Positions 1 to 52,981 of a DNA stretch of 64,000 nucleotides are shown here, one piece after another (positions within the stretch are counted from its first letter, which is position 1; every line of letters starts with the position of its first letter). The translations under genes and the position numbers were made by a program. The stretch covers positions 181,875 to 245,874 of the IMG/VR virus record IMGVR_UViG_3300024520_000047. One strand, given 5' to 3'. Below the pieces are notes generated by a model. The model searched no databases, had not been told where the DNA came from, and worked only from the letters and a program-made list of their open reading frames with translations.

Positions 1-1450
1 AGGGATTTTGTTCTAACAATATATCTGTAAAAGTTTTCTTTTCATAAAATAACACACATCCTGTGGTGGTCCCGCTAGGGATAACCACACGTCCACTATT
101 ATATCTAAATTGATTATCATTAACTATTTCAGTAATAACCGCAAAATCTTCTGGATATAAATCTGTATTAAAATCAGAATTTAAAGAATTAGTTACAGTT
201 ACAATATTACCCACTTCTTGACCGTGATTAGGATAATTAACTAACACAACACCTGATGGTGAAGCGATAGACATTGAGACACCACAAGTAATAAAATGAG
301 TATCACATGCGGTATCACCAGTTCGTATTTTTAATAATGTTTCTACAGTCCATCCACATTCTGGCCTATTGGGTAAAACTTTATAGGGGTAACCATCTAA
401 TTGGTAAAATCCTTGATAAAAACCACCATAAAGTTGTTGGTAATACCCTTCAGTTCCTCCAGTTACACTCACAATACTATAGTTGGTACGGTGTTGAGTA
501 TAACCAGTAATTTGTTTCATTTTAAATCTTCTATCATAATGGAGATGGTCATATTTATATTGGTCAGGCATCTCAACCCATAACTTTAAACTCTCTACTT
601 GACAAGGAACCTTCAAATACCCTACATTAGTTGTAGTATGTGCTGTAAAGATACCCAAATTAACACTACTTCCTGATTGAATTATTTTTGCTTTACTAAG
701 AGTTACTGTGTAAGCGCTACTACCTGTAAAAACACAACATCCAGAATATTGTAAATTATTCTTTATAATTTCAAAATTATTAGTAATTGAAGTCCCTGTT
801 GATGTTAATCCTGATACATTACATGGATATAAGAATTGAAAAGCTGTTTCGGTTGAGACCTCTGTTGGTGTTGTGGGGCTCCATGTAGCACCACTAAAAT
901 AACAAATTCCTGAGGTAGGTGTGGTAGTTCCTGTGACTGTTCCAGTAATGGCAGTTAAGGAAATGAATTCTCTCAGACACCAATCATACTCGGTGGTATT
1001 ACCACTCATATATTTAACAAGGGAGTTATCTATGCCTGTCAGTCCTACATCACAAATAGATTCTACAAAATTAGTATTTGCGGTGTAAACACTATTTTCA
1101 CATTTAGGGCATGAACATTTAGCGTTGCTAATTGTGGGTGTGTGGTTTTCCCAATATGATAAACTTAATAACGTATTATTATCATAATATTGATTACATG
1201 ATAGATTAGGTTGCCAAGTACTATTAGTATCATTTAAGTCAATCCAAAAACCTAAACAGTTAGACGAAAATGTTATTCCACTCAAATAATCATCTAAGTG
1301 GTCCCACACACATATAATGTATGGGGAATAAATTACTTCCTTATTATAGTCTTTTTCATCCGCCGCTAAAAAGAAATCGTAGTAGCTACTATAATCCAAT
1401 CTTGCGTCTAATTTATTGAAATAATAGTTATTTAAATTTTGTGGTCCCAT
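1..1450 (-). CDS. Virion structural protein, Cys/Thr/Gly-rich, truncated by window start (not in ORF track)
   Basis: Manual translation from ATG at 1450 (MGPQNLNNYYFNKLDARLDYSSYYDFFL...GGFYQGFYQLDGYPYKVLPNRPECGWTVE...) stays open to base 1; TATTTAT motif 5 nt upstream. Confidence 0.75.
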   Translation of the reverse strand, partial: MGPQNLNNYYFNKLDARLDYSSYYDFFLAADEKDYNKEVIYSPYIICVWDHLDDYLSGITFSSNCLGFWIDLNDTNSTWQPNLSCNQYYDNNTLLSLSYWENHTPTISNAKCSCPKCENSVYTANTNFVESICDVGLTGIDNSLVKYMSGNTTEYDWCLREFISLTAITGTVTGTTTPTSGICYFSGATWSPTTPTEVSTETAFQFLYPCNVSGLTSTGTSITNNFEIIKNNLQYSGCCVFTGSSAYTVTLSKAKIIQSGSSVNLGIFTAHTTTNVGYLKVPCQVESLKLWVEMPDQYKYDHLHYDRRFKMKQITGYTQHRTNYSIVSVTGGTEGYYQQLYGGFYQGFYQLDGYPYKVLPNRPECGWTVETLLKIRTGDTACDTHFITCGVSMSIASPSGVVLVNYPNHGQEVGNIVTVTNSLNSDFNTDLYPEDFAVITEIVNDNQFRYNSGRVVIPSGTTTGCVLFYEKKTFTDILLEQNP

Positions 1451-1455
1451 TTAAG

Positions 1456-1485
1456 ATAAATATTTACTATCTATTTAATATTTAT
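1456..1485. promoter_or_regulatory. Back-to-back putative late promoters (TATTTAT on each strand)
   Basis: ATAAATA at 1456-1462 serves the minus-strand gene; TATTTAT at 1479-1485 serves the plus-strand gene at 1501. Confidence 0.6.
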
Positions 1486-1500
1486 AGTAAAAACAAATAG

Positions 1501-2175
1501 ATGAAAGAATTAACACATGATGGTACTTGTAATAGGGTTCATCCCGATATTTCTCACGAAAAATGGGAAGAAAAAGAACAAAAAAAAGAAGAAACTAATG
1601 AAGAACAAGAATTAGATGAACTTGTTGATTATGATGGTTCACTATTAAGTTCTAAAATTCCTCTAGGGATTAATAAGACGAATAAAATAAGTAGAAGTAC
1701 TTCAGATGATGTTGTTAAAACCGCACACCAAAAAGGTAATGGTTTGGGGTATTACTATAAGCGTTACTGGGGGGAATCATATCTGGGTGGTGGATTAAGT
1801 GATGTTGAGGATATAGACACCATGTCAGCAGATGAAACAATTGACCATTTTGAAGATGAGTACGGATTAAGTCCATTAAGGGCACACGAAAAAGCGTCAG
1901 AATATGGTAAAATTGTAAATGGTAGTGAAGAAGATTTGCATGATGAGAAACAACGGATTGTAGAATTAGGTAATAATAAAATGAAAGATATGTTAGAAAT
2001 ATTATTAAGTAAGGACGCTAAAAATACAGAACGTGGGTTGGTAGACACGGATAAGCCTATAGAATTACACGATGAGAATAACGATAATCCCATACTAACT
2101 AAAATGGGTACTAAATTTAAACAAGCTTGTGATGCTCACGGAATTAATCCACAAGACATATTAAAAAATATATAA
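1501..2175 (+). CDS. Hypothetical acidic protein, probably late/virion-associated
   Basis: 224-aa ORF, first of a tightly packed plus-strand operon behind TATTTAT. Confidence 0.7.
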   Translation: MKELTHDGTCNRVHPDISHEKWEEKEQKKEETNEEQELDELVDYDGSLLSSKIPLGINKTNKISRSTSDDVVKTAHQKGNGLGYYYKRYWGESYLGGGLSDVEDIDTMSADETIDHFEDEYGLSPLRAHEKASEYGKIVNGSEEDLHDEKQRIVELGNNKMKDMLEILLSKDAKNTERGLVDTDKPIELHDENNDNPILTKMGTKFKQACDAHGINPQDILKNI

Positions 2176-6231: not shown

Positions 6232-6853
6232 AGAATTTAAAGAAATTAAAAACGTTGTTAAAAATCTTAATAAACTTAAAGAGTTAACGACAGATTTAGA
6301 TATTGAAAAAGGTAAATCGCTAGAAGAAGTTTTGGGCTTAGATTTACAGGATATTGAAAATATAACGACACCTTCAGAAAAACCTAAAATAGATATTAAA
6401 TTTATAAATAAAAGTGATAACGATGACCCATCCTATTTTCATGAGGGTGATAGTGGATTCGATTTTCGGGCCCACATTCCTAATTACGACCCACTCGAAA
6501 CCCCCAATATCGTGGTAGAAGTGGGAAAAGTATCTATAATACCTACGGGCCTTTACTTTGGGATTCCTAAGGGTTATGAATTACAAGTAAGGCCACGTAG
6601 TGGATTAGCAGCAAAATTTAATATTACTGTCTTAAATACACCCGGAACAGTAGACAGTAATTATCGAGGAGAAGTTAAAATAATATTAATTAATCTAGGT
6701 GAGACAGATTTTCAAATCGAAAATGGTGATAGGGTAGCTCAAGGGGTGATAACGCCTGTACTCACACCAGAGTGGTCTCAAATGGTAAAAGTAAATAAAC
6801 TAAGTTCAACGGACAGAGGAGAAGGGGGATTTGGAAGCACGGGGAAAATTTAA
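6224..6853 (+). CDS. dut: Trimeric dUTPase with ~55-aa N-terminal extension
   Basis: All five motifs: GDSGFD, RPRSGLA, GTVDSNYRGE, GDRVAQ, RGEGGFGSTG. Confidence 0.95.
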   Translation: MIKEFKEIKNVVKNLNKLKELTTDLDIEKGKSLEEVLGLDLQDIENITTPSEKPKIDIKFINKSDNDDPSYFHEGDSGFDFRAHIPNYDPLETPNIVVEVGKVSIIPTGLYFGIPKGYELQVRPRSGLAAKFNITVLNTPGTVDSNYRGEVKIILINLGETDFQIENGDRVAQGVITPVLTPEWSQMVKVNKLSSTDRGEGGFGSTGKI

Positions 6854-43861: not shown

Positions 43862-45727
43862 TTATTTTACTTCTTCATATTCTACATCTGTAGTTTCAGG
43901 GTCATCTTCAGGTGGTGGTGTTGTGTCACCTTCAGTTTGTTCGTATAACTTACTAGAAATAGTTTGCCATTTGGAATTAAGGTCGTCCATATTAACTTTA
44001 ATTTCATCTAAATCTTCATTTTTGTGAGATTCCCTTAACTTATTAACTGATTCTTGGAGTAACTGTTTATCGTCGTCATTTAATTTTTCATCAAACTCAG
44101 TAATTTGTCTTTCCGTTTGAAAAATCATGGAATCCGCCTCATTTAGTTTATTGATTTTTTCTAACTTTTCTGAATCCTCTTTAGAGTTTTTCTCAGCTTC
44201 CATTTTCATTTTATTAATTTCTTCCTCATTGAGACTATTACCAGATTCGATTCTAATTTTTTGTTCTTTATTAGTTCCTTTATCTTTAGCACTAACACTT
44301 ATAATACCATTTGCGTCAATATCAAAAGTGACCTCAATTTGGGGAATACCTCTTTGTGCAGGTGGAATATCAGTTAATTGAAAATTACCTAATTTTCTAT
44401 TATCCATAGCCATTGGCCTTTCTCCTTGTAGTACATGAATATCTACTGCGGGTTGATTATCTATAGCTGTAGAAAATACTTGGGATTTACTCGTTGGGAT
44501 TGTAGTGTTTGCATCTATAAGTTTAGTCATAACACCCCCCATAGTCTCAATACCTAATGAAAGTGGTGTTACATCTAAAAGTAATACGTCATTAACATCT
44601 CCCGTAAGAACACCCCCTTGTATTGCAGCACCCATAGCTACAACTTCATCTGGATTTACACCTTTAAATGGTTTCTTTTTAAAAAATTTCTCAACAGATT
44701 TTTGTATAGCTGGAATTCTGGTAGACCCACCAACTAAAATAACCTCATCAATGTCTCCAATAGTTAAACCACTATCTTTAAGTGCTTTTTTACATGGGAC
44801 CATTGTTTTCGTCACTAATTTATCAATCATAGATTCGAACTTAGCTGTAGTTAGTTTTTTAACCAAGTGCTGGGGTCCTGTACTATTAGCACTTAAATAT
44901 GGTAAATTGATATCTGTGGAATTTGAAGACGACAATTCTATTTTAGCTTTTTCAGCCGTATCTTTCAATCTTTGTAAAGCGATAGCGTCTTTACTTACAT
45001 CTATTCCAGTATCTGATTTAAATTCATTAATTAACCAATCAATTATAATTTCATCAAAATTATCTCCCCCAAGATGTGTGTCTCCATTAGTAGAGAGTAC
45101 TTCAAATACACCACCACCTATTTCAAGAATAGAAACATCAAATGTTCCACCACCCAAATCGTAAACCACAACTTTTTTGTCTTGATTTTCATCTAAACCA
45201 TAAGCTAATGCCGCTGCGGTAGGTTCGTTTATAATACGTAAAACATTTAACCCAGCAATTTCACCAGCTTCTTTAGTAGCGTTTCTTTGGGAATCATTAA
45301 AATAAGCGGGTACTGTAATAACAGCATCCGTTACCTTAGTTCCTAAATACTCCTCTGCCGTTTTTTTCAAATTTTGTAAAACTATAGCTGAAATTTCTTG
45401 TGGTATATATGACTTTCCATCCACACTAATTTTAATACTATCATTAGTGCTTTTTTCTATTTTATATGGAATTTTACTTATTTCTTTTTTTATTTCACTG
45501 AATTTACTTCCAATGAATCTTTTTACCGAATAAATGGTATTTTCTGGATTAGTTACTGATTGTCTTTTTGCCGAGTCACCAATTACTCGTTCATTGCTTT
45601 TAAAAGCAACAATAGAAGGTGTTGTTCTTTTACCTTCTAAATTTACTATGACTTCAGGTGTACCACCTTCAATTACTGAAACGCATGAATTTGTGGTTCC
45701 TAAGTCAATCCCTATTACTTTTGACAT
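43862..45727 (-). CDS. dnaK: Hsp70 chaperone DnaK
   Basis: [42 protein letters not shown]; C-terminus DVEYEEVK. Confidence 0.98.
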
Positions 45728-45791: not shown

Positions 45792-45814
45792 TAAGTATAC
45801 CGTTTAATTATTTA

Positions 45815-45848
45815 TGACATACTGTCACCATATACTGACATATTGTCA
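45815..45848. promoter_or_regulatory. Tandem palindromic operator-like sites between divergent dnaK and clpC
   Basis: TGACA-TAC-TGTCA (45815-45827) and TGACA-TAT-TGTCA (45836-45848), 21 bp apart. Confidence 0.65.
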
Positions 45849-45897
45849 CTACTTGATTTTAAAAGGTATTAATGTATTATTTATAATAAAAAATGTT

Positions 45898-47949
45898 ATG
45901 ATAGAACCGACAGGAAGTTTTGCAGAATTTGAAAAGGGTAAACCCCAAAATTTACCTAAAAAAGAATCACTTTCATCGAAAAGTGGAACACCAGTACTAG
46001 ATAATTTTTCAAGAGATTTGATAAAATATGCGGAAGAAGGAAAATTAGACCCCGTGGTTGGGAGAGAAAAAGAAATTAATAGAATAGCCCAAATTTTATC
46101 ACGAAGAAAAAAAAATAATCCAGTATTAATAGGTGAACCAGGGTGTGGAAAAACCGCACTAGTAGAAGGGTTGGCTATGAAAATAAATGAAGGTAAATGT
46201 CCTCGTAATTTATTAGATAAAAGAATTGTGGGATTAGACCTAACATCCATCGTAGCTGGTACCAAATATAGGGGTCAGTTTGAAGAAAGAATGAAAGCTA
46301 TAATTGATGAATTAGTAGAACATGAAGAAATTATAATTTTTATTGATGAGATTCATACCGTCGTTGGAACCGGAAATGCTTCTGGTTCATTGGACGCCGC
46401 CAACATATTTAAACCCGCATTAGCACGGGGGGAGGTACAATGTATTGGAGCAACCACCATAAATGAATATAGAGAAAATATTGAAAAGGATGGTGCTCTA
46501 GAAAGAAGGTTTCAAAAAATAATAGTCGAACCCACAACTGTAGAAGAAACATTACAAATACTTAAAAATTTAAAAGAACGTTATGAAGAACACCATAAAG
46601 TTAATTATAGTGATGAGTCTTTAGAAGCTTGTGTGTTATTATCTGAAAGATATTTGACTCACAGAGAATTTCCAGATAAAGCTATAGATATTATGGATGA
46701 AGTGGGAGCTAAAGTACAAGTAGAATTAGAATACCCTAAAGAAATTGAGGATTTAAGACGAATACTTAGTGATTTAAAAGAAGAAAAGGTAGAGGTGGTA
46801 AAATCACAAAAATATGAAAAAGCCGCGGAATTAAGAGATAAGGAACGCACAGTTTTAGGTACTCTTGAAGAAAAAAAATTGGCGTGGGAAATGGAATTAG
46901 AAGATAGTCGTAAACCAGTAACGGAAGATGATATATATGATGTAGTTTCCCAAATAACAAAGATACCCATATCTAGATTAGACACTAATGAAACAAAAAC
47001 ATTACTGAGTTTAGAGAGCTCTCTTCAAAAAATTGTAATAGGTCAAAATGAAGCTGTCAAGAAAGTTGCAAGAGCCATCAGGCGTAATAGGGTTGGGATT
47101 AGAGATAATAAAAAACCAATTGGTTCTTTCATGTTTTTAGGTTCCACGGGTGTTGGTAAAACTCACTTAGCTAAAGCGATTGCACGTGAGGTGTTCGGTA
47201 ATGAAGATTCTTTAATACGGTTAGATATGTCAGAATATAAAGAAAAATTCAATTCAACAAGATTGATTGGTTCACCACCTGGATATGTTGGTTATAATGA
47301 AGGGGGTCAACTAACTGAAGCTGTTCGCAAAAAACCCTATTCGGTAATATTGTTAGATGAAATAGAAAAAGCTCATTCCGATATTTATGACCTATTATTA
47401 CAAATATTTGATGAAGGGCATATAACTGATAGTTTAGGGAGAGTCATTAATTTTAAAAATACCCTTATCATTATGACCTCTAATGTGGGAGCTAAACAAA
47501 TGGGTGAATTTTCAAACCCTTTAGGGTTCACAACGAAAGATTCTGAATCAAGAACAGAGGAAGCGGTATCACAAATATTGAAAAAAGCACTAAAAAATAC
47601 CTTTAAGCCAGAATTTCTAAATAGGGTAGAACATAATATAATATTTAAAAGTTTAGAAAAAAAATCTATTAGTAAAATAGTAAGGTTGGAACTGAATCAC
47701 TTACAAGAAAGATTAAAAGAAAAAAAATACCACATGACTTTTGATAAAAAGGTAACTGATTTTATTGTAAAAGAAGGGTATGACGATAAATTCGGTGCAA
47801 GACCAATAAAAAGAGCAATTCAAAATAAGTTAGAAGATTTTATTTCTGAAGAAATATTAAAAGGAAATGTCGTGGAACACAATACCTACACTATGAGAAT
47901 TAATAAAGATAATGAAATTACTATAAACGAAGAAAGTGATAATGAGTAG
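45898..47949 (+). CDS. clpC: ClpC-type AAA+ unfoldase lacking the N-terminal Clp_N domain
   Basis: Two Walker A motifs ([16 protein letters not shown]), UVR coiled coil ([10 protein letters not shown]), ClpP-binding LGF loop; start moved from 45814 to 45898 as the extra 28 codons cover the operator. Confidence 0.88.
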
Positions 47950-47953
47950 TTTA

Positions 47954-50341
47954 TTAGGCAATAACTGCTCCATATGAACCAGTAACTATCCAACCAGCAT
48001 CTGCATCCCAAAGTAAATCAATCGAATCTCCCGCATCTGTTAGTGTAAAACTACTATATGGGCTAGTCCACGTATTAATGGTCATGGAACCAGTAAGTGA
48101 ATCGTCATACACATAAATAGTCAATCTTTGTCCCTGACTACCATTAGGTAAAGACCCCGGAGCCGGGGACGAACCTATTTGTGCTATTCTCCAAATAGAT
48201 TTTTTACTTATAGAGGGTGAAACATCGGCATCTGTAGTTACTATCCCTGTTTTATGTATTTGAGCTTCTGCGATTAAAGTATCACCTATGTAAGTAGTAC
48301 TTAATGTAGTTACCCCTGTGCCCGTTAAATCACCATCAACAACAGCTTCAGGGCCTATTGTAACGGGTGAACAACCAGTTATGGTAGACACGTATAATGT
48401 TCCACCAAACTCACATAAATCTACATTGGGCATATAAACTGTATCGTCGGCATTTCCTGTAATGCCAAACCCACCAAGTACTGCACTTCTATCTCCATTG
48501 ACTATGGAGTTAAAAGAATGTGCAAATGAAGTTAAACCTGAAGCTGTGGAACCACTACCCCCCGCGTGGGAACCTGAACCAGCCGCTACAGTTTTAATAT
48601 TTTGAGCATGAGACGCGTCTCCTGACGCTATGGGCCCAATATCGGTTGGTCCTGGGATGCCTATCTCAATATTTGGTCCTCCTTCTGCATGTGCCCACTT
48701 ACCACTAGCAATTGTATTATGTCCTTGAGCGTGAGAACCATAATTACCACTTGCAATCGTATAACCACCTTCAGCGTGAGAACCTGTACCTGAGGCTAGA
48801 GTATTATATCCTTCAGCGTGACCTACTGCCTCTGTTGTTGCAGAGGTTTGGTATCCCTCAACGTGTGAATAATCAGCGTCTGCTGTAATAATTGTCTGAT
48901 ATCCTTCACCATGTGAATAATTACCTATAACTGTAGTGTAAAATCCTTCCGCGTGAGAATAATCACCATGAGCTTTTGTTCCTCTTCCTTCCGAGTGTGC
49001 TGTAACTCCAGTTGCTTCTGTTTGGAATCCTTGAGCGTGACAATAATATTTTGCTCCACTGCCCGCTAATGTCCCATATCCTTCTGCGTGAGACATATGA
49101 GTCATAGCAGATGTTTGGGCCCCTTCAGCGTGAGACCCAATACCTAAAGCATACCCACCAATATAGAGACTAGCCCCAGGAAGTATATAACCACCTTCAG
49201 CGTGAGAACAAGCTCCTATAGCTAGTGACCCATATCCTTCTGCGTGAGAAACTTGTCCACTAGCTAAGGTAAAACCACCTTCTGCGTGAGCACCCATTGT
49301 AGTTGCTGAAGTAGGTGCTATTGTAGGTAAGTCTCCAGTTTTTATTGAGCCACCTTCAGCGTGTGAAGCAGTACCACTTGCGAGATTCCCCCACCCTTCA
49401 GCGTGAGAATAGTTTTCTATTGCTCTTGTATAAGACCCTTCAGCATGGGACGACAGTCCACTAGAAATTGTAGTGTGTCCTTCAGCGTGTGAAGCTATAC
49501 CATACGCTTTAGTATCTATGCCTTCAGCGTGTGAACCATAACCTATCGCTGTCGTATCTTTACCTTCAGCGTGAGATGTGTCTCCAGTTGCCCACGAACT
49601 GTCTCCCTCCGCATGAGAATAGTTCCCTTCAGCTTGTGTACTTATACCTTCCGCATGTGAACTATTACCATATGCTTGAGTGTCTGTACCTTCAGCGTGT
49701 GAACCCTGTCCTGTTGCTATAACACCAGTTTTCCACCCATAACCTTCCGCGTGAGCACCTCTACCGATAGCTATATTAGTCGCCAACCCACCATCACTGT
49801 ACCCCTCAACGTGTGAACCATAACCTATCGCTGTCGTATCTTTACCTTCAGCATGAGATGAAGTTCCCGTCGCCCAAGTGTTTTCGCCTTTAGCGTGAGA
49901 ATAGTTCCCTTCAGCTAATGTGGTACTTCCCCACGCTATAGAATTAATGCCTGTTGCGGATGAAGTAATATGTTGGATAGGACTATGTTCTGTAACAGCA
50001 TCTAAACACGCGTATCTATTATTTATATATAAATTAGTTATACAACTACCACTTCCACCACTAAATACAGTATCTGCGGGGTCTAATAGACCAAACATTA
50101 TCGTATCTCCCGAAATAAAGGTTGTAATTCCGCTGGTTCCTTGAAGTCGTCTAAAATTTAATGCCCCATCATTAGGGTTAGCTGTCTTACTCACATAGAG
50201 ACCTATACCACCAGAACCTAGATTATTTCCAATGGTATTATCTATTTTTTGACTTAAAATACTAAGATTACCATCTAACTCACCATGAGTTAATGCGTTA
50301 CTTTGGCTTAATCTTAAATAAAATGGAATTGGTAATGGCAT
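47954..50341 (-). CDS. Tail fibre/adhesin with ~30 SHAEG beta-roll repeats
   Basis: 14-aa xxTxAxGxxSHAEG repeats (YadA-head-like); N-terminal LTHGELDGN; TATTTAT at 50359-50365. Confidence 0.75.
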   Translation of the reverse strand: MPLPIPFYLRLSQSNALTHGELDGNLSILSQKIDNTIGNNLGSGGIGLYVSKTANPNDGALNFRRLQGTSGITTFISGDTIMFGLLDPADTVFSGGSGSCITNLYINNRYACLDAVTEHSPIQHITSSATGINSIAWGSTTLAEGNYSHAKGENTWATGTSSHAEGKDTTAIGYGSHVEGYSDGGLATNIAIGRGAHAEGYGWKTGVIATGQGSHAEGTDTQAYGNSSHAEGISTQAEGNYSHAEGDSSWATGDTSHAEGKDTTAIGYGSHAEGIDTKAYGIASHAEGHTTISSGLSSHAEGSYTRAIENYSHAEGWGNLASGTASHAEGGSIKTGDLPTIAPTSATTMGAHAEGGFTLASGQVSHAEGYGSLAIGACSHAEGGYILPGASLYIGGYALGIGSHAEGAQTSAMTHMSHAEGYGTLAGSGAKYYCHAQGFQTEATGVTAHSEGRGTKAHGDYSHAEGFYTTVIGNYSHGEGYQTIITADADYSHVEGYQTSATTEAVGHAEGYNTLASGTGSHAEGGYTIASGNYGSHAQGHNTIASGKWAHAEGGPNIEIGIPGPTDIGPIASGDASHAQNIKTVAAGSGSHAGGSGSTASGLTSFAHSFNSIVNGDRSAVLGGFGITGNADDTVYMPNVDLCEFGGTLYVSTITGCSPVTIGPEAVVDGDLTGTGVTTLSTTYIGDTLIAEAQIHKTGIVTTDADVSPSISKKSIWRIAQIGSSPAPGSLPNGSQGQRLTIYVYDDSLTGSMTINTWTSPYSSFTLTDAGDSIDLLWDADAGWIVTGSYGAVIA

Positions 50342-50388: not shown

Positions 50389-51210
50389 TTAAAAGAGTAA
50401 TTGGGAATAATCTTTTTCTTGGTGTTTAAATGTATGTCTAGTATTCCCCAGCTTTTTAAGAATATTTTTTCCTAGTAAAATTGCATTACTAACATCTTCT
50501 ACTACAACATATTCATTTTTTGTGTGGTATCTATAATAACCAGTTGCAAAATTTAAACATGGAAAATCAAAATTTTTCTTTAACATCATTGTGTCGGTAT
50601 ATGGATGATATAACCATTTAATATACCCGTGATTTAATATAATATCCTTAACTGATTCAAAAAACAAACTTTTTTCTTCATACAGTTGGACACCCATTAA
50701 AGTTTTACTCATTGTATCATTTTCTGTAGAGTCAAATTGTATTGCGTAGCCCACATTTTTAAAAAACTCTGGGTCTGCTTGTTTTGAACCGTGACATCCA
50801 GTTTCTTCTGCAACGGGAAAGAAAACTTTACACGTGTCTACTTCTCGAAGAATTTCCATACATGTAAACACCCCAGCTTTATCGTCTCCACCAATACCTG
50901 TTGGTTCTCCAGTTTCTTTTTCATAAGCTTTTAAAGCAAATTTAGGTTCATTTTGTGCATTTAACCTATATTCCTCCTCTATAACCATATCAACTTTTGG
51001 GTGAACAGTATCTAAGTGAGCAACCAAGCAAGGATAAATCTCACTCTGGCCTTTGGTAATATAAAGACACCCCAAGTCGTCTTGATAAAAGGACACACCA
51101 TTTATTTGTTGTAACTCATTTATCAAAAATTCAATTAGGTCGTCTTCCTCCCAAGTATAGGTCGGAACGGCTAACAAATTTTTTAATCGTTGTAATTGTT
51201 TATTTTCCAT
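50389..51210 (-). CDS. M20/M28/M42-type zinc metallopeptidase
   Basis: VAHLDTVH, GGDDKAG, AEETGCHGS metal-ligand motifs. Confidence 0.8.
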   Translation of the reverse strand: MENKQLQRLKNLLAVPTYTWEEDDLIEFLINELQQINGVSFYQDDLGCLYITKGQSEIYPCLVAHLDTVHPKVDMVIEEEYRLNAQNEPKFALKAYEKETGEPTGIGGDDKAGVFTCMEILREVDTCKVFFPVAEETGCHGSKQADPEFFKNVGYAIQFDSTENDTMSKTLMGVQLYEEKSLFFESVKDIILNHGYIKWLYHPYTDTMMLKKNFDFPCLNFATGYYRYHTKNEYVVVEDVSNAILLGKNILKKLGNTRHTFKHQEKDYSQLLF

Positions 51211-51398: not shown

Positions 51399-51442
51399 AA
51401 ACTCTTTTTTTAAATAAATATTTCATTTATATTTGTTTTCAT

Positions 51443-51516
51443 GCTCCCGTAGCTCAACTGGATAGAGCAACAGCCTTCTAAGCTGTAGGTTATAGGTTCG
51501 AGTCCTATTGGGAGTA
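51443..51516 (+). tRNA. trnR: tRNA-Arg (UCU)
   Basis: Full cloverleaf: GCTCCCG/TGGGAGT acceptor, ACAGC-CTTCTAA-GCTGT anticodon arm, ATAGG-TTCGAGT-CCTAT T arm; CCA not encoded. Confidence 0.95.
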
Positions 51517-51599
51517 CGTAAAAAATTTTGTAATATTCTTTGTATTGTCAAGTATTTATATTACATTTATAATTAGTTCTTTGAAAATATTTAAAATAT

Positions 51600-52013
51600 G
51601 GGGGTGACTGGAATTGATTGGCATACACCGATAAAAGTCAGCACGTCGAGGCTAAACTAACCTTGGAAAACTGGTTTAACTTTCTAAAACGGCAACGTAT
51701 TAGATACCATGACAACTCTTGGACTTATCCATGACGAGTCAACTGTGACTGTAGCGTAACTAGGTTACGACTATTTTTAGTCCCGTTCTTACTATAGAAT
51801 TTAAGATTTGTTTCTTTAGTTTGTAGAACGTCATAAGACAAATCGAACTCACCGTAGTCATTTAGGTGATTAAAATATTAAATGACTGGGACTCTGGATG
51901 GTTGTTTATTCTATGAAAGATTAGTCCGAGGATAAAAGAATAAACTAAACGTGTAGGATAGATTTCTATAGTTGATGAGCAAGACGCGGGTTCGAATCCC
52001 GCCACCTCCACCA
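51600..52013 (+). ncRNA. ssrA: tmRNA
   Basis: 5' GGGGGTGACTGGAATTGA; 3' GCGGGTTCGAATCCCGCCACCTCCACCA; G3-U Ala identity pair; internal tag ORF 51691-51759. Confidence 0.93.
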
Positions 52014-52026
52014 TATTAAATTAATT

Positions 52027-52137
52027 AAGTGGGTACCTGAGACGGACGCTTCGTAGCCTGTAATGGATAGAATGGGTAAGACCATTTAGGGTATTAATCT
52101 CCATTGAGACCCGCGTTCTTGGAGAACCCACTTTTTT
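52027..52137 (+). ncRNA. Putative structured RNA downstream of tmRNA
   Basis: Closing helix AAGTGGGT/ACCCACTT plus nested helices AATGGA/TCCATT, AATGG/CCATT, ACGG/CTGT, then T-run. Confidence 0.4.
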
Positions 52138-52981
52138 ATTTTCCTAAATTTTGGGTGAATTTACCCATATATTTTTGTAGTAAGTCACTCATGATGCCTC
52201 CACCATCTGACTTACTCTGTTGGTATGAAGCCGCGGTATCTGTTGGTGGTTCCTCAACCTTTTCACCGTACTTCACTTTTTCTTTTCCCTCTTTTTCTTT
52301 ATCATCAAGTACGCCCTGTACCTCATCTTTCTTTTGTTTTAATTTACCACATAAAACCTCTTTTACTTTTCCTTCTATTTCTTGATATATAGCACTATTG
52401 TCCCCTATATCAGTTAAACTATTACGTAATACCTGTTCAAAAGTACCGTCAAGCCCTATAGTAGATTCACCTAATTTAAAAGCTCCATATTCTATAATTC
52501 CTTTTGTTAGAAATGGTGCTAAAAAGTTACAATCAAGTAATTTGGGGATGTCCCATATTGGTACGTTTCCTAATGCAATCCCTACAAATTTTCCTAACTC
52601 TCCTGTTATTCCAAAAGTCCCTAATAACCACCTCCATAACTTTTCTCTTACGGTACCCCATAAAGAACCCAAAATACCTTGATTCTGGGACATCGTGAAC
52701 TCCTGTTCTGACAAATATTTTTTATTATGTTTTAAAGAATAAGAAATTTCATCTAATGTAAATCCCCTACTTGTAAGACGATGCATATCTCTAACAAAAT
52801 TTTCACATATAACATCAGGTGATTTCCCAATATTTTTACGTTCAAATCGGTCTGCCCAATTAATTAATCTTATGTTTTTGGATTCAGATAACACTGGTTG
52901 TTTGGGTATCGACATTTCAGATTGTGCTACACTCTCAATAAATTCAACTAATTCTGACTCTGTAAATTTAATTTTTGACAT
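52136..52981 (-). CDS. Putative internal head protein with amphipathic/hydrophobic helices
   Basis: N-terminal KIKFTESELVEFI leader, LSE sites, Gly/Trp-rich hydrophobic middle. Confidence 0.65.
   Translation of the reverse strand: MSKIKFTESELVEFIESVAQSEMSIPKQPVLSESKNIRLINWADRFERKNIGKSPDVICENFVRDMHRLTSRGFTLDEISYSLKHNKKYLSEQEFTMSQNQGILGSLWGTVREKLWRWLLGTFGITGELGKFVGIALGNVPIWDIPKLLDCNFLAPFLTKGIIEYGAFKLGESTIGLDGTFEQVLRNSLTDIGDNSAIYQEIEGKVKEVLCGKLKQKKDEVQGVLDDKEKEGKEKVKYGEKVEEPPTDTAASYQQSKSDGGGIMSDLLQKYMGKFTQNLGK

What the first reader, a model, noticed from the sequence alone, without database searches (positions are those of the whole stretch)
51691..51759. Phage tmRNA with a long non-canonical tag (GNVLDTMTTLGLIHDESTVTVA)
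Seen: after TAAAAC the resume codon GGC opens a 22-codon frame ending VTVA-stop. Known: bacterial tags are usually about 10 aa and end in an ALAA-type degron read by ClpXP; Bacteroidota tags start with G and end YALAA. Inference: this tag may evade host ClpXP, or be read by the phage's own ClpC encoded ~4 kb away, so the phage would reroute ribosome rescue and the fate of tagged proteins. No smpB is present in the window, implying use of host SmpB.
Basis: partly seen in the sequence, partly recalled or inferred. Interest (0 to 1): 0.72.

Follow-up and report, generated by a model that had tools for sequence, protein, structure and literature searches.

The report
Marine jumbo-phage tmRNA, long conserved tag
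A giant seawater phage carries its own ribosome-rescue RNA (tmRNA) whose 22-residue protein tag is more than twice the usual length, is conserved in 82 readable related copies, and lies beside phage-encoded chaperone and protease genes, but which protease reads the tag is unknown.

Summary
Window 51600-52013 (+) is a full-length one-piece tmRNA (Rfam RF00023, 103 bits against a cut-off of 47). GGC at 51691 opens a 22-codon frame, GNVLDTMTTLGLIHDESTVTVA, that ends at the stop 51757-51759.

The frame is under coding selection. I collected 103 related copies from marine viral and metagenome contigs, and 82 gave a readable tag of 21-25 aa. Among 43 unique 22-codon versions, G1, G11, L12, S17 and V19 never vary. 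38% of codon differences are synonymous in this frame, against 6-8% in the other two.

The RNA looks functional. The G3·U70 alanine identity pair is invariant, PK1 and helix 5 covary, and metatranscriptomes hold contigs of about 91-97% identical relatives that cover the tmRNA and not its flanks.

No SmpB is found in the 246 kb phage record or in 22 related records. The phage encodes an N-domain-less ClpC-type unfoldase with a ClpP-docking LGF loop 3.6 kb from the tmRNA, plus DnaK, a PepT-like peptidase and two ClpPs with intact triads.

A -VA end is a good degron in enterobacteria. Long odd tags are already known in phage tmRNAs (Bxz1, 25 aa). I rate this a new variant of a known kind, of moderate interest.

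The parts
51600..52013 (+). One-piece tmRNA gene, 414 nt
   Evidence: Rfam RF00023 at 103.1 bits (cut-off 47), model positions 1-374 of 374. 20 full-length relatives in viral records. A 403-nt metatranscriptome contig spans 51608-52011.
51600..51606 (+). Acceptor stem, 5' strand (GGGGGUG), with G3 of the G3·U70 alanine identity pair
   Evidence: Pairs with 52003-52009. All 7 pairs are invariant in 18 of 18 aligned copies, and the third is G·U.
51647..51678 (+). Pseudoknot PK1 (two stems), ending 12 nt before the resume codon
   Evidence: All 12 pairs are canonical in 12 of 12 core copies, with both sides changed at 3 pairs (GC/CG, AT/GC, CG/TA) and one side changed at others.
51691..51693 (+). 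Resume codon GGC (Gly)
   Evidence: Covariance-model alignment. Gly is invariant with GGC, GGA and GGT codons, and an in-frame TAA lies at codon -2 in the window. Bacteroidota tmRNAs resume at UAACU|GGC, the context of most phage copies; the window reads UAAAAC|GGC.
51691..51759 (+). Tag reading frame: 22 codons (GNVLDTMTTLGLIHDESTVTVA) plus TAA
   Evidence: Sequence. Codon-position and synonymous/non-synonymous tests. Metatranscriptome relatives that differ at 20 or more positions elsewhere show, inside the tag, one synonymous change in one run and none in the other three.
51755..51769 (+). Helix 5 hairpin enclosing the stop codon
   Evidence: 6 pairs with compensatory changes, including the partner of the stop codon's third base where TAA becomes TAG. 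Also picked up by the hairpin scan.
51986..52013 (+). T-arm (GCGGG / UUCGAAU / CCCGC), acceptor 3' strand and ACCA end
   Evidence: The T-stem covaries across copies (GC, UA, AU and CG at one pair) and the 3' end reads CACCUCC-ACCA.
51443..51517 (+). tRNA-Arg (anticodon TCT), 82 nt upstream on the same strand; probably co-transcribed
   Evidence: ARAGORN; Rfam tRNA at 69 bits.
51428..51435 (+). TATATTTG, which matches the Bacteroidota -7 promoter motif TAnnTTTG and ends 7 nt before the tRNA's first base
   Evidence: Pattern search. That it acts as a promoter is inferred.
51545..51573 (+). Sigma-70-like promoter match TTGTCA-17-TATAAT, ending 27 nt before the tmRNA
   Evidence: 11 of 12 consensus matches. 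This is a consensus match only.
45898..47949 (+). ClpC-type double AAA+ unfoldase without an N-domain (the ORF opens at 45814; the likely start is Met29 at 45898)
   Evidence: Pfam AAA, AAA_lid_9, UVR, AAA_2 and ClpB_D2-small. One continuous alignment to B. subtilis ClpC residues 154-793 (E 3.5e-215), with LGF aligned to ClpC's VGF ClpP-docking loop. It is the only AAA_2 protein in the record.
43862..45727 (-). DnaK (Hsp70), divergent from the ClpC-type gene
   Evidence: Pfam HSP70 E 2.9e-257. NCBIfam DnaK at 981 bits, above the cut-off. It is a neighbour of ClpC, on the opposite strand, in 11 related records.
50389..51210 (-). M42/M20 (PepT-like) peptidase homologue next to the tRNA-tmRNA pair
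   Evidence: Weak Pfam and NCBIfam matches, E 1e-4 to 1e-7. It is found in 12 related loci, 10 of which also carry the tmRNA 5' end.
52027..52135 (+). Large hairpin followed by a T-run after the tmRNA; a likely terminator shared with the convergent gene that ends at 52136
   Evidence: dG -38.2 kcal/mol, z -2.96. Not conserved in relatives and matches no Rfam family.

Best explanation
This is a functional phage-encoded one-piece tmRNA. It belongs to a large, previously uncatalogued family carried by marine jumbo phages whose hosts are probably Bacteroidota.

Inferred mechanism from tmRNA biology: host AlaRS charges it with alanine by way of the G3·U70 pair. Host SmpB and EF-Tu deliver it to ribosomes stalled on broken mRNAs. 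Translation resumes at GGC 51691 and adds Ala plus 22 residues before the stop in helix 5.

The tag has three parts: an N-terminal segment with hydrophobic residues about every third position (x-x-Φ-x-x-[L/M]-x-x-L-G-L-V), a polar or acidic linker, and a hydrophobic V-[A/T]-[V/I]-A carboxy terminus. Its strong conservation at the peptide level means a protein reads it. The most likely role is a degradation tag for an AAA+ protease. The C-terminus would engage the unfoldase pore, and the extra N-terminal half would act as a second recognition or adaptor-type site.

The phage brings a matching tool kit: a ClpC-type unfoldase with a ClpP-docking loop, two ClpPs, DnaK and a PepT-like peptidase. 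The module as a whole would therefore free ribosomes and turn truncated proteins into amino acids during infection. Whether the reader of the tag is host ClpXP, phage ClpC-ClpP or both is open.

Shown: the RNA, the frame, the selection on the peptide, presence in RNA libraries, gene content and linkage. Inferred: charging, use of host SmpB, the degron function and the protease partner.
For: - tmRNA identity: RF00023 at 103 bits, full length.
- RNA structure: G3·U70 and the acceptor stem are invariant and the T-arm covaries. PK1 and helix 5 are canonical except for one pair in one copy, with compensatory changes.
- Coding selection: 82 copies carry tags of 21-25 aa. G1, G11, L12, S17 and V19 are invariant in 43 unique versions. 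The synonymous share is 0.38 against 0.08 and 0.06 in the other frames.
- RNA evidence: metatranscriptome contigs of 403, 323, 203 and 151 nt from relatives about 91-97% identical cover the tmRNA. Depth is zero between the tRNA and the tmRNA and beyond about 20 nt past its 3' end. The tag is the least changed part.
- Resume context: most phage copies have the same UAACU|GGC context as Bacteroidota tmRNAs with an identical 5' 18-mer; the window reads UAAAAC|GGC.
- Host clue: Shine-Dalgarno sites are not used, 2 of 159 long ORFs.
- Proteostasis genes: a ClpC-type unfoldase with an LGF loop, two ClpPs with Ser-His-Asp triads and DnaK.
- Linkage: the tmRNA lies within about 4-12 kb of ClpC in 16 records. 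It lies next to DnaK in G002 and next to ClpP in G004 despite a different gene order.
- A -VA terminus works as a degron in model bacteria (PMC11003136).
Against: - No SmpB in the phage or in any of 22 relatives, so activity depends on an unidentified host's SmpB.
- No experiment shows charging, tagging or degradation.
- The host is not identified. Outside the tRNA-like domain the RNA barely aligns with Bacteroidota tmRNAs, and a strong sigma-70-type promoter match upstream does not fit a Bacteroidota host well.
- The covariance-model alignment marks several non-canonical pairs in helix 2 and PK4.
- Codons 2-7 show few synonymous changes, so the first quarter of the tag rests on weaker evidence.
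- Relatives G023 and G024 keep ClpC (G023 also DnaK) with no tmRNA in the DNA held, so the protease genes do not need the tmRNA.
- No known adaptor (SspB, MecA, ClpS) is encoded.
Confidence: 0.7

Rival explanations
1. A private (orthogonal) tag-and-protease pair. The long tag is poorly read by host ClpXP and is read specifically by the phage ClpC-type unfoldase with phage ClpP1/ClpP2. The phage would then control the fate of rescued polypeptides independently of the host.
For: - The tag differs from the host-type GE..YA[L/M]AA in length and in the last four residues.
- The phage has exactly one Clp unfoldase, with a ClpP-docking loop, and two ClpPs with intact triads. It has no ClpX and no Lon.
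- The tmRNA stays beside Clp or DnaK genes in three different gene orders.
- Precedent for a long tag matched to a different protease: Mesoplasma tags read by Lon (own knowledge).
Against: - No binding or degradation data exist.
- A -VA end is compatible with ClpXP in enterobacteria (PMC11003136).
- ClpC and DnaK occur in relatives with no tmRNA in the DNA held.
- Linkage can be explained by common descent.
- The two records with other tag types that lack ClpC (G001, G011) are only 30% and 41% complete.
Confidence: 0.25
2. Ribosome rescue is the selected function and the tag is not a degron. On this view the conserved peptide serves another purpose, for example recruiting DnaK-type chaperones through its Leu-rich core, or simply driving inactivation of the tagged fragments.
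For: - In several bacteria the essential activity of tmRNA is ribosome release, not tagging (established knowledge; review PMC8012679).
- In most copies the core K-L-A-T-L-G-L-V-R resembles the DnaK-binding pattern of a hydrophobic core flanked by basic residues (own knowledge), and DnaK is encoded nearby.
Against: - Strong purifying selection on the last residues (V19, V/I21, A22) and a hydrophobic carboxy terminus are the hallmarks of tmRNA degrons.
- The window's own copy lacks the basic flanks (D-T-M-T-T-L-G-L-I-H-D).
Confidence: 0.12
3. The true tag is shorter because translation resumes at a later in-frame codon. ARAGORN proposes codon 5 (AKL...) in some relatives and codon 15 (VDSKVAVA) in others.
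For: - ARAGORN's calls.
- Codons 2-7 carry few synonymous differences, so their translation is less well proven.
Against: - ARAGORN's starts are inconsistent between near-identical genes, and it misses 7 of 20 relatives and the window copy.
- Codon 5 is Ala, Asp or Ser depending on clade, whereas codon 1 is always Gly with synonymous variation.
- The covariance model and the Bacteroidota resume context both point to GGC.
Confidence: 0.1
4. A non-functional relic: a host tmRNA fragment picked up by imprecise excision, or an integration-site remnant.
For: tmRNA genes are common prophage integration sites, and fragments are found in prophages (PMC9004378).
Against: The gene is full length, shows compensatory base-pair changes and codon-level selection across 82 copies, is present in RNA libraries, and is absent as such from 185,579 bacterial species genomes at the level of its 5' 18-mer plus a long tag.
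Confidence: 0.02

Closest known systems
Chromosomal tmRNA (ssrA) of Bacteroidota, e.g. Dyadobacter and Bacteroidales (tags GESTYAMAA, GENTYALAA)
   Same: One-piece form; identical first 18 nt (acceptor stem and D-arm analogue); G3·U70; Gly resume codon, in the UAACU|GGC context in most phage copies (UAAAAC|GGC in the window); stop codon inside helix 5.
   Different: The tag has 22 codons instead of 9 and ends V-T-V-A (family: V-A-V-A) instead of A-[L/M]-A-A. Outside the tRNA-like domain the sequences hardly align. It is carried by a phage with no smpB.
Known phage tmRNAs: mycobacteriophage Bxz1 group, Bacillus phage G, huge phages from metagenomes (PMC4131195, PMC7162821)
   Same: Phage-encoded tmRNA placed among or beside tRNA genes. 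The tag is unlike the host's and is long in Bxz1 (25 aa, ATDTDATVTDAEIEAFFAEEAAALV). Phage G's tag ends -QVA.
   Different: No detectable sequence similarity to any of 50,697 GenBank phage records. The lineage is different (Bacteroidota-like, marine). Here the tag is documented as conserved across many divergent copies, and the gene is physically linked to phage ClpC, DnaK and ClpP genes. Some huge phages carry their own SmpB (PMC7162821); this family does not.
Marine phage two-piece tmRNAs (OM43 phage Melnitz, pelagimyophages; PMC9004378)
   Same: A marine phage carrying a complete tmRNA. The same proposed roles: keeping the hijacked translation machinery running, or tagging proteins to recycle amino acids.
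   Different: Those are permuted two-piece, alphaproteobacterial-type genes, and in Melnitz under a glutamine riboswitch. This one is a one-piece gene, a form which that survey found to be rarely marine (2.5% of one-piece phage tmRNAs).
Mollicutes tmRNA with long tags read by Lon (Mesoplasma florum; own knowledge, system cited in PMC9097571)
   Same: A tag more than twice the usual length, with a non-LAA hydrophobic end. It shows that tag and protease can change together.
   Different: That is a cellular system in organisms lacking ClpXP. Here the candidate alternative protease is phage-encoded ClpC-ClpP, no Lon is encoded, and no functional data exist.

Membership tests
tmRNA (Rfam RF00023, one-piece form) | Covariance-model score at or above the curated gathering score over the full model | tested here: met
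   103.1 bits against 47, model positions 1-374 of 374, E 3.5e-39.
tmRNA (Rfam RF00023, one-piece form) | tRNA-like domain: 7-bp acceptor stem with G3·U70, T-arm, discriminator A and CCA end | tested here: met
   GGGGGUG pairs with CACCUCC followed by ACCA. The G·U at pair 3 is invariant in 18 of 18 copies and the T-stem covaries.
tmRNA (Rfam RF00023, one-piece form) | Pseudoknot PK1 a short distance upstream of the resume codon | tested here: met
   Two stems of 5 and 7 bp at 51647-51678, 12 nt before GGC. Canonical in 12 of 12 copies, with both sides changed at 3 pairs.
tmRNA (Rfam RF00023, one-piece form) | Internal start-codon-less reading frame under coding constraint, ending at a stop held in helix 5 | tested here: met
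   Synonymous share 0.38 against 0.08 and 0.06 in the other frames; variable columns 16, 10 and 21 by codon position; the stop pairs within helix 5, with compensation when TAA becomes TAG.
tmRNA (Rfam RF00023, one-piece form) | Canonical degron end (…A-[L/M/V]-A-A) on a tag of about 10 residues | tested here: not met
   22 residues ending V-T-V-A. Family endings: VAVA 54, VTVA 12, VAIA 7, and others. This feature is typical of tmRNAs rather than defining; tags of 2 to more than 25 aa are on record (PMC11915505).
tmRNA (Rfam RF00023, one-piece form) | Partner SmpB available, and trans-translation activity | not testable with these tools
   No SmpB in the phage record or in 22 relatives. Host SmpB is presumed. 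Needs biochemistry.
tmRNA (Rfam RF00023, one-piece form) | Expressed as a discrete stable RNA | tested here: inconclusive
   Contigs from four metatranscriptome runs cover the tmRNA of close relatives. The largest is 403 nt, spanning 51608-52011, and flank depth is zero between the tRNA and the tmRNA and beyond about 20 nt past its 3' end. DNA carry-over in RNA libraries cannot be excluded, and the contigs are about 91-97% identical relatives, not this exact copy.
ClpC-type Hsp100 unfoldase (for the neighbouring gene 45898-47949) | Two AAA+ modules with Walker motifs and pore loops, and a short M-domain with a UVR motif | tested here: met
   Pfam AAA, AAA_lid_9, UVR and AAA_2. GEPGCGKT and [12 protein letters not shown] and GYVG are visible in the translation. 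One-stretch alignment to B. subtilis ClpC, whereas ClpB models match in two stretches.
ClpC-type Hsp100 unfoldase (for the neighbouring gene 45898-47949) | ClpP-docking [LIV]-G-[FL] loop in D2 | tested here: met
   NPLGFTT aligns with ClpC KYVGFNV. Actual docking to the phage ClpPs is not shown.
ClpC-type Hsp100 unfoldase (for the neighbouring gene 45898-47949) | N-terminal Clp_N repeat domain (adaptor and phospho-arginine site) | tested here: not met
   The alignment to ClpC begins at its residue 154. Only about 50 residues precede D1, and no Clp_N appears among the 25 Pfam families listed (of 37 matched). So it is a ClpC-like core, not a full ClpC.

The most novel reading that the evidence does not exclude
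The phage runs a private quality-control and recycling circuit. Its tmRNA adds a tag that host ClpXP reads poorly. The phage's own N-domain-less ClpC reads the tag directly, without an adaptor, and feeds the tagged fragments into phage ClpP1/ClpP2 and on to the PepT-like peptidase. During infection the host's truncated proteome would thus be converted into amino acids under phage control. This would be a natural orthogonal degron-protease pair, widespread in ocean jumbo phages.
Probability: 0.22. Interest if true: 0.8.

Novelty: new variant of a known kind. Interest (0 to 1): 0.55.

Why it matters
Phage tmRNAs are usually listed in genome papers and then left alone, and what their odd tags do is unknown. 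This family offers an unusually clean handle on that question. A 22-residue tag is conserved at the peptide level across many divergent ocean phages, so some protein must read it. The obvious candidate readers, a ClpC-type unfoldase and two ClpPs, are encoded by the same phages, so the question can be tested with a handful of recombinant proteins.

If the pair proves specific, it would show phages taking over the fate of rescued proteins as well as ribosome rescue. That would matter for nitrogen-poor oceans, where amino-acid recycling should pay. It would also give synthetic biology a new orthogonal degradation tag.

There is a practical point too. ARAGORN misses or mis-reads many of these genes, so surveys of phage tmRNAs based on it undercount this family.

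Tried and rejected
- Complex prediction: phage ClpP1 + ClpP2 + the D2 module of the ClpC-like protein gave no verdict (score 0.16, mark 0.34). It is not evidence either way.
- blastn of the tmRNA against 50,697 GenBank phage records: no match.
- Related loci through the 281-aa neighbour (52136-52981): none. Through the peptidase neighbour: two relatives, both without a tmRNA.
- The metagenomic huge phages whose ClpC-like proteins are about 55% identical (LR756502, LR745206, 635-642 kb) have no full tmRNA, so the family does not extend to them.
- Searches of the phage record for SmpB, Lon, RF-1/ArfB, ClpS, SspB and MecA were all negative. The record is only about 77% complete.
- Phage proteins ending in the tag's C-terminal motif: none. 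0 of 652 ORFs end in -VA or -AA, but about one would be expected, so this is not informative.
- RNAalifold on the broad MAFFT alignment recovered only the tRNA-like domain and part of helix 2, so I checked the pseudoknots by script instead.
- The downstream hairpin at 52027-52135 is not conserved in relatives and matches no Rfam family.
- Host identity could not be settled. The tmRNA aligns with Bacteroidota tmRNAs only in the tRNA-like domain.
- I did not build a custom covariance model, because the full alignment exceeds the 400-column limit.
Full report
**1. What is there.** The window is the last 64 kb of a 245,874 bp IMG/VR virus record that CheckV estimates to be 77% complete, so this is a jumbo phage of roughly 300 kb. 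The same DNA is found in seawater metagenomes. Rfam's tmRNA model matches window 51600-52013 (+) over its full length at 103.1 bits (cut-off 47). ARAGORN reports only the tRNA-Arg(TCT) at 51443-51517 and misses the tmRNA. The sequence reads TAAAAC, then GGC at 51691, then 21 more sense codons and TAA at 51757-51759. The covariance-model alignment puts the consensus resume codon on this GGC.

A tmRNA model search of the viral records gave 20 full-length relatives. Pooled, 103 copies carry the 5' motif and 82 are long enough to read a tag. Tag lengths are 21 aa (9 copies), 22 (65), 23 (6) and 25 (2).

- Among 43 unique 22-codon versions, G1, G11, L12, S17 and V19 never change.
- L/M7, L/M10, V/I13, V/I21 and A22 are nearly fixed.
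- The carboxy terminus is VAVA (54), VTVA (12), VAIA (7), VAFA (3), LATA (3), VAVS (2) or AVVA (1).
- 38% of codon differences are synonymous in the proposed frame, against 7.8% and 6.4% in the other two.
- 21 of 22 third positions vary, against 10 of 22 second positions.
- Only this frame is open in every copy.

The peptide is therefore under purifying selection, so it is translated and something reads it.

**3. Where does the tag start?** The frame is certain; the first codon is slightly less so. ARAGORN finds 13 of the 20 relatives and starts their tags at three different in-frame codons. Four observations favour GGC:

- The covariance-model alignment.
- Gly at this codon is invariant, with GGC, GGA and GGT all in use.
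- In the window an in-frame TAA lies two codons upstream.
- The only bacterial tmRNAs that share the first 18 nt are from Dyadobacter and one Bacteroidales MAG, out of one genome for each of 185,579 species. They resume at UAACU|GGC, the context of most phage copies (the window reads UAAAAC|GGC), and encode GESTYAMAA or GENTYALAA.

Codons 8-22 carry abundant synonymous change. Codons 2-7 differ mainly between clades. I put about 0.1 on a later start.

**4. Is the RNA functional?**

- The acceptor stem, including the G3·U70 pair that makes tmRNA a substrate of alanyl-tRNA synthetase, is identical in 18 of 18 aligned copies, and the T-stem covaries.
- Both stems of PK1 (51647-51678) are canonical in 12 of 12 core copies, with changes on both sides at three pairs.
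- Helix 5 (51755-51769) holds the stop codon and shows compensation even where TAA becomes TAG.
- Sequence diversity is lowest in the tRNA-like domain and PK1 and highest in PK3-PK4. Within the tag it follows the codon pattern.
- In four marine metatranscriptome runs, contigs of 403, 323, 203 and 151 nt from relatives about 91-97% identical cover the tmRNA. Depth is zero between the tRNA and the tmRNA and beyond about 20 nt past its 3' end.
- Those contigs differ from the window at 20 or more positions downstream of the tag. Inside the tag, one run shows one synonymous change (51699 A>G) and the other three show none.

DNA carry-over in those libraries cannot be excluded, so I treat expression as likely rather than proven. 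Two possible promoters lie upstream. One is a Bacteroidota-type TATATTTG that ends 7 nt before the tRNA. The other is a sigma-70-like TTGTCA-17-TATAAT that ends 27 nt before the tmRNA.

**5. Partners.**

- No SmpB is found in the phage record or in 22 related records, including one that is 93% complete. The RNA must therefore use host SmpB.
- The ORF at 45814-47949 (probable start 45898) is a double AAA+ protein. It aligns in one stretch with B. subtilis ClpC residues 154-793 (E 3.5e-215).
- It has the UVR-containing short middle domain and both Walker A motifs and pore loops. It lacks the N-domain.
- Its LGF tripeptide aligns with ClpC's VGF ClpP-docking loop.
- It is the only Clp-type unfoldase in the record. 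No Lon, ClpS, SspB, MecA or RF-1/ArfB domain was found.
- Two adjacent ClpP genes with intact Ser-His-Asp triads lie elsewhere in the record, outside the window.
- DnaK (43862-45727) is divergent from the ClpC-like gene.
- A PepT/M42-like peptidase (50389-51210) sits beside the tRNA-tmRNA pair and beside the tmRNA in 10 of the held related loci.

**6. Linkage.** The ClpC-like gene lies within about 4-12 kb of the tmRNA in 16 records, many of them short fragments. DnaK is next to ClpC in 11 records. Two records with a different gene order are more telling. In G002 the tmRNA lies directly beside DnaK and 6 kb from a ClpP. In G004 a ClpP lies directly beside the tmRNA, while ClpC (there with a longer ORF) is far away. 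This suggests a functional association. However, relatives G023 and G024 keep ClpC and the peptidase (G023 also DnaK), and at that junction other protein genes stand in place of the tRNA-tmRNA pair. The cassette is therefore accessory, and the protease genes do not depend on it.

**7. Host.** The phage makes no use of Shine-Dalgarno sites: 2 of 159 long ORFs have one, which equals the random expectation. That is typical of Bacteroidota and their phages, though not exclusive to them. The tmRNA's Gly resume codon, its context and its 5' end are also Bacteroidota-like. Beyond the tRNA-like domain, however, it hardly aligns with Bacteroidota tmRNAs, and the sigma-70-type promoter match does not fit well. 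A Bacteroidota host is an inference. As the OM43 phage Melnitz shows, the lineage of a phage's tmRNA need not be that of its host (PMC9004378).

**8. How it most likely works.** By analogy with all studied tmRNAs, the RNA is alanylated, enters stalled ribosomes with SmpB, and adds Ala plus the 22 encoded residues. The tag has three parts:

- a segment with hydrophobic residues at positions 4, 7, 10, 12 and 13;
- a polar or acidic stretch;
- a small hydrophobic carboxy terminus ending in Ala.

This parallels the two-part logic of the E. coli tag, where the adaptor site lies upstream and the protease site at the end. I therefore favour a degradation tag whose extra half provides a second recognition site.

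Which protease reads it is open. A -VA end does not argue for escape from ClpXP, because the -LVA ssrA variant is the fastest of the standard variants in E. coli and Salmonella (PMC11003136). The phage's own ClpC-ClpP set is an attractive alternative reader, but nothing here tests it. The single complex prediction gave no verdict. The amino-acid-recycling idea has been proposed before for marine phage tmRNAs (PMC9004378) and fits the ClpP and peptidase genes.

**9. Comparison with what is known.** Phage tmRNAs have been catalogued in mycobacteriophages, Bacillus phage G and metagenomic huge phages (PMC4131195, PMC7162821). About 2.3% of isolate phage genomes carry one, and few one-piece ones are marine (PMC9004378). 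The commonest tag length is 10 aa (PMC11915505). I re-derived the Bxz1 tag (25 aa, ATDTDATVTDAEIEAFFAEEAAALV) and the phage G tag (13 aa, AKLNITNNELQVA), so a long, non-canonical tag on a phage tmRNA is not new in itself. Four things are new here:

- the family itself, which has no match among 50,697 GenBank phage records;
- its abundance in the ocean;
- the demonstration that the long tag is conserved as a peptide;
- its association with a phage-encoded ClpC, ClpP and DnaK set.

**10. Verdict.** This is a new variant of a known kind, with interest about 0.55. It would rise to about 0.8 if the tag proves to be read specifically by the phage protease.

Noticed in passing
window 51600-52013; loci L028-L047: ARAGORN misses the window's tmRNA and 7 of 20 relatives. 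Where it does call the gene, it starts the tag at three different in-frame codons. Surveys of phage tmRNAs that rely on ARAGORN, such as the huge-phage survey, would undercount or mis-read this family.
   Followed up: yes
L023 (record G018), 1309-1512 minus strand: One relative's tmRNA has the family 5' end and a 20-aa tag (GNVYANMEAAGILATSNVVA) and is followed, inside the gene, by a group I intron (RF00028, 79.1 bits). It is an intron-form phage tmRNA. The same record's ClpC-like gene is also split into two pieces about 1.8 kb apart.
   Followed up: partly
L008 (record G003), 6271-6428 minus strand: Another contig with the same 5' 19-mer matches the permuted two-piece tmRNA model (RF04321, 57.6 bits) and encodes a canonical 10-aa tag, GEQVELAMAA.
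   Followed up: partly
L047 (G001), L038 (G011), L112, L120, L125: Other tmRNAs share the 5' end but carry different tags. L047 has DEMSTMTFDDLVAFVGAEEYAYAA (24 aa). L038 has ANDDFQLAQAA in a short 323-nt gene. Several metagenome copies have even longer frames. G001 and G011 show no ClpC-like gene in the 30-41% of the genome held.
   Followed up: partly
whole record G000 (window = 181875-245874 of it): Shine-Dalgarno motifs are absent upstream of long ORFs: 2 of 159, the same as random. G+C is 33%. Both fit a Bacteroidota-type host.
   Followed up: partly
G000:C1:29414-30788 (outside the window): Two adjacent ClpP genes (220 and 202 aa), both with Ser-His-Asp triads, like the ClpP1/ClpP2 pairs of actinobacteria and cyanobacteria. 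G002 matches ClpP at two places (the second match runs through a stop); G004, G010 and G013 at one.
   Followed up: partly
window 52027-52135: A roughly 105-nt multi-branched hairpin closed by AAGUGGGU/ACCCACUU and followed by a T-run lies between the tmRNA and the convergent 281-aa gene. dG is -38.2 kcal/mol and z is -2.96. It is not conserved in relatives and matches no Rfam family, so it is probably a two-way terminator.
   Followed up: yes
window 47954-50341 (minus strand): A 795-aa protein with YadA-head repeats (Pfam E 3.5e-10), an adhesin or tail-fibre-like protein, sits between the ClpC-like gene and the peptidase.
   Followed up: no
L004 (G023) 1-1400; L005 (G024): Relatives G023 and G024 have the ClpC-like and peptidase genes (G023 also DnaK) but lack the tRNA-Arg + tmRNA cassette at the junction, where other protein genes lie instead. 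The cassette is gained or lost as a unit.
   Followed up: partly
window 45814-45897: The longest ORF of the ClpC-like gene begins with 28 odd residues (MTYCHHILTYCHYL…) that no relative shares. The real start is probably Met29 (MIEPTGS…), which gives a 683-aa protein like those of the relatives.
   Followed up: partly
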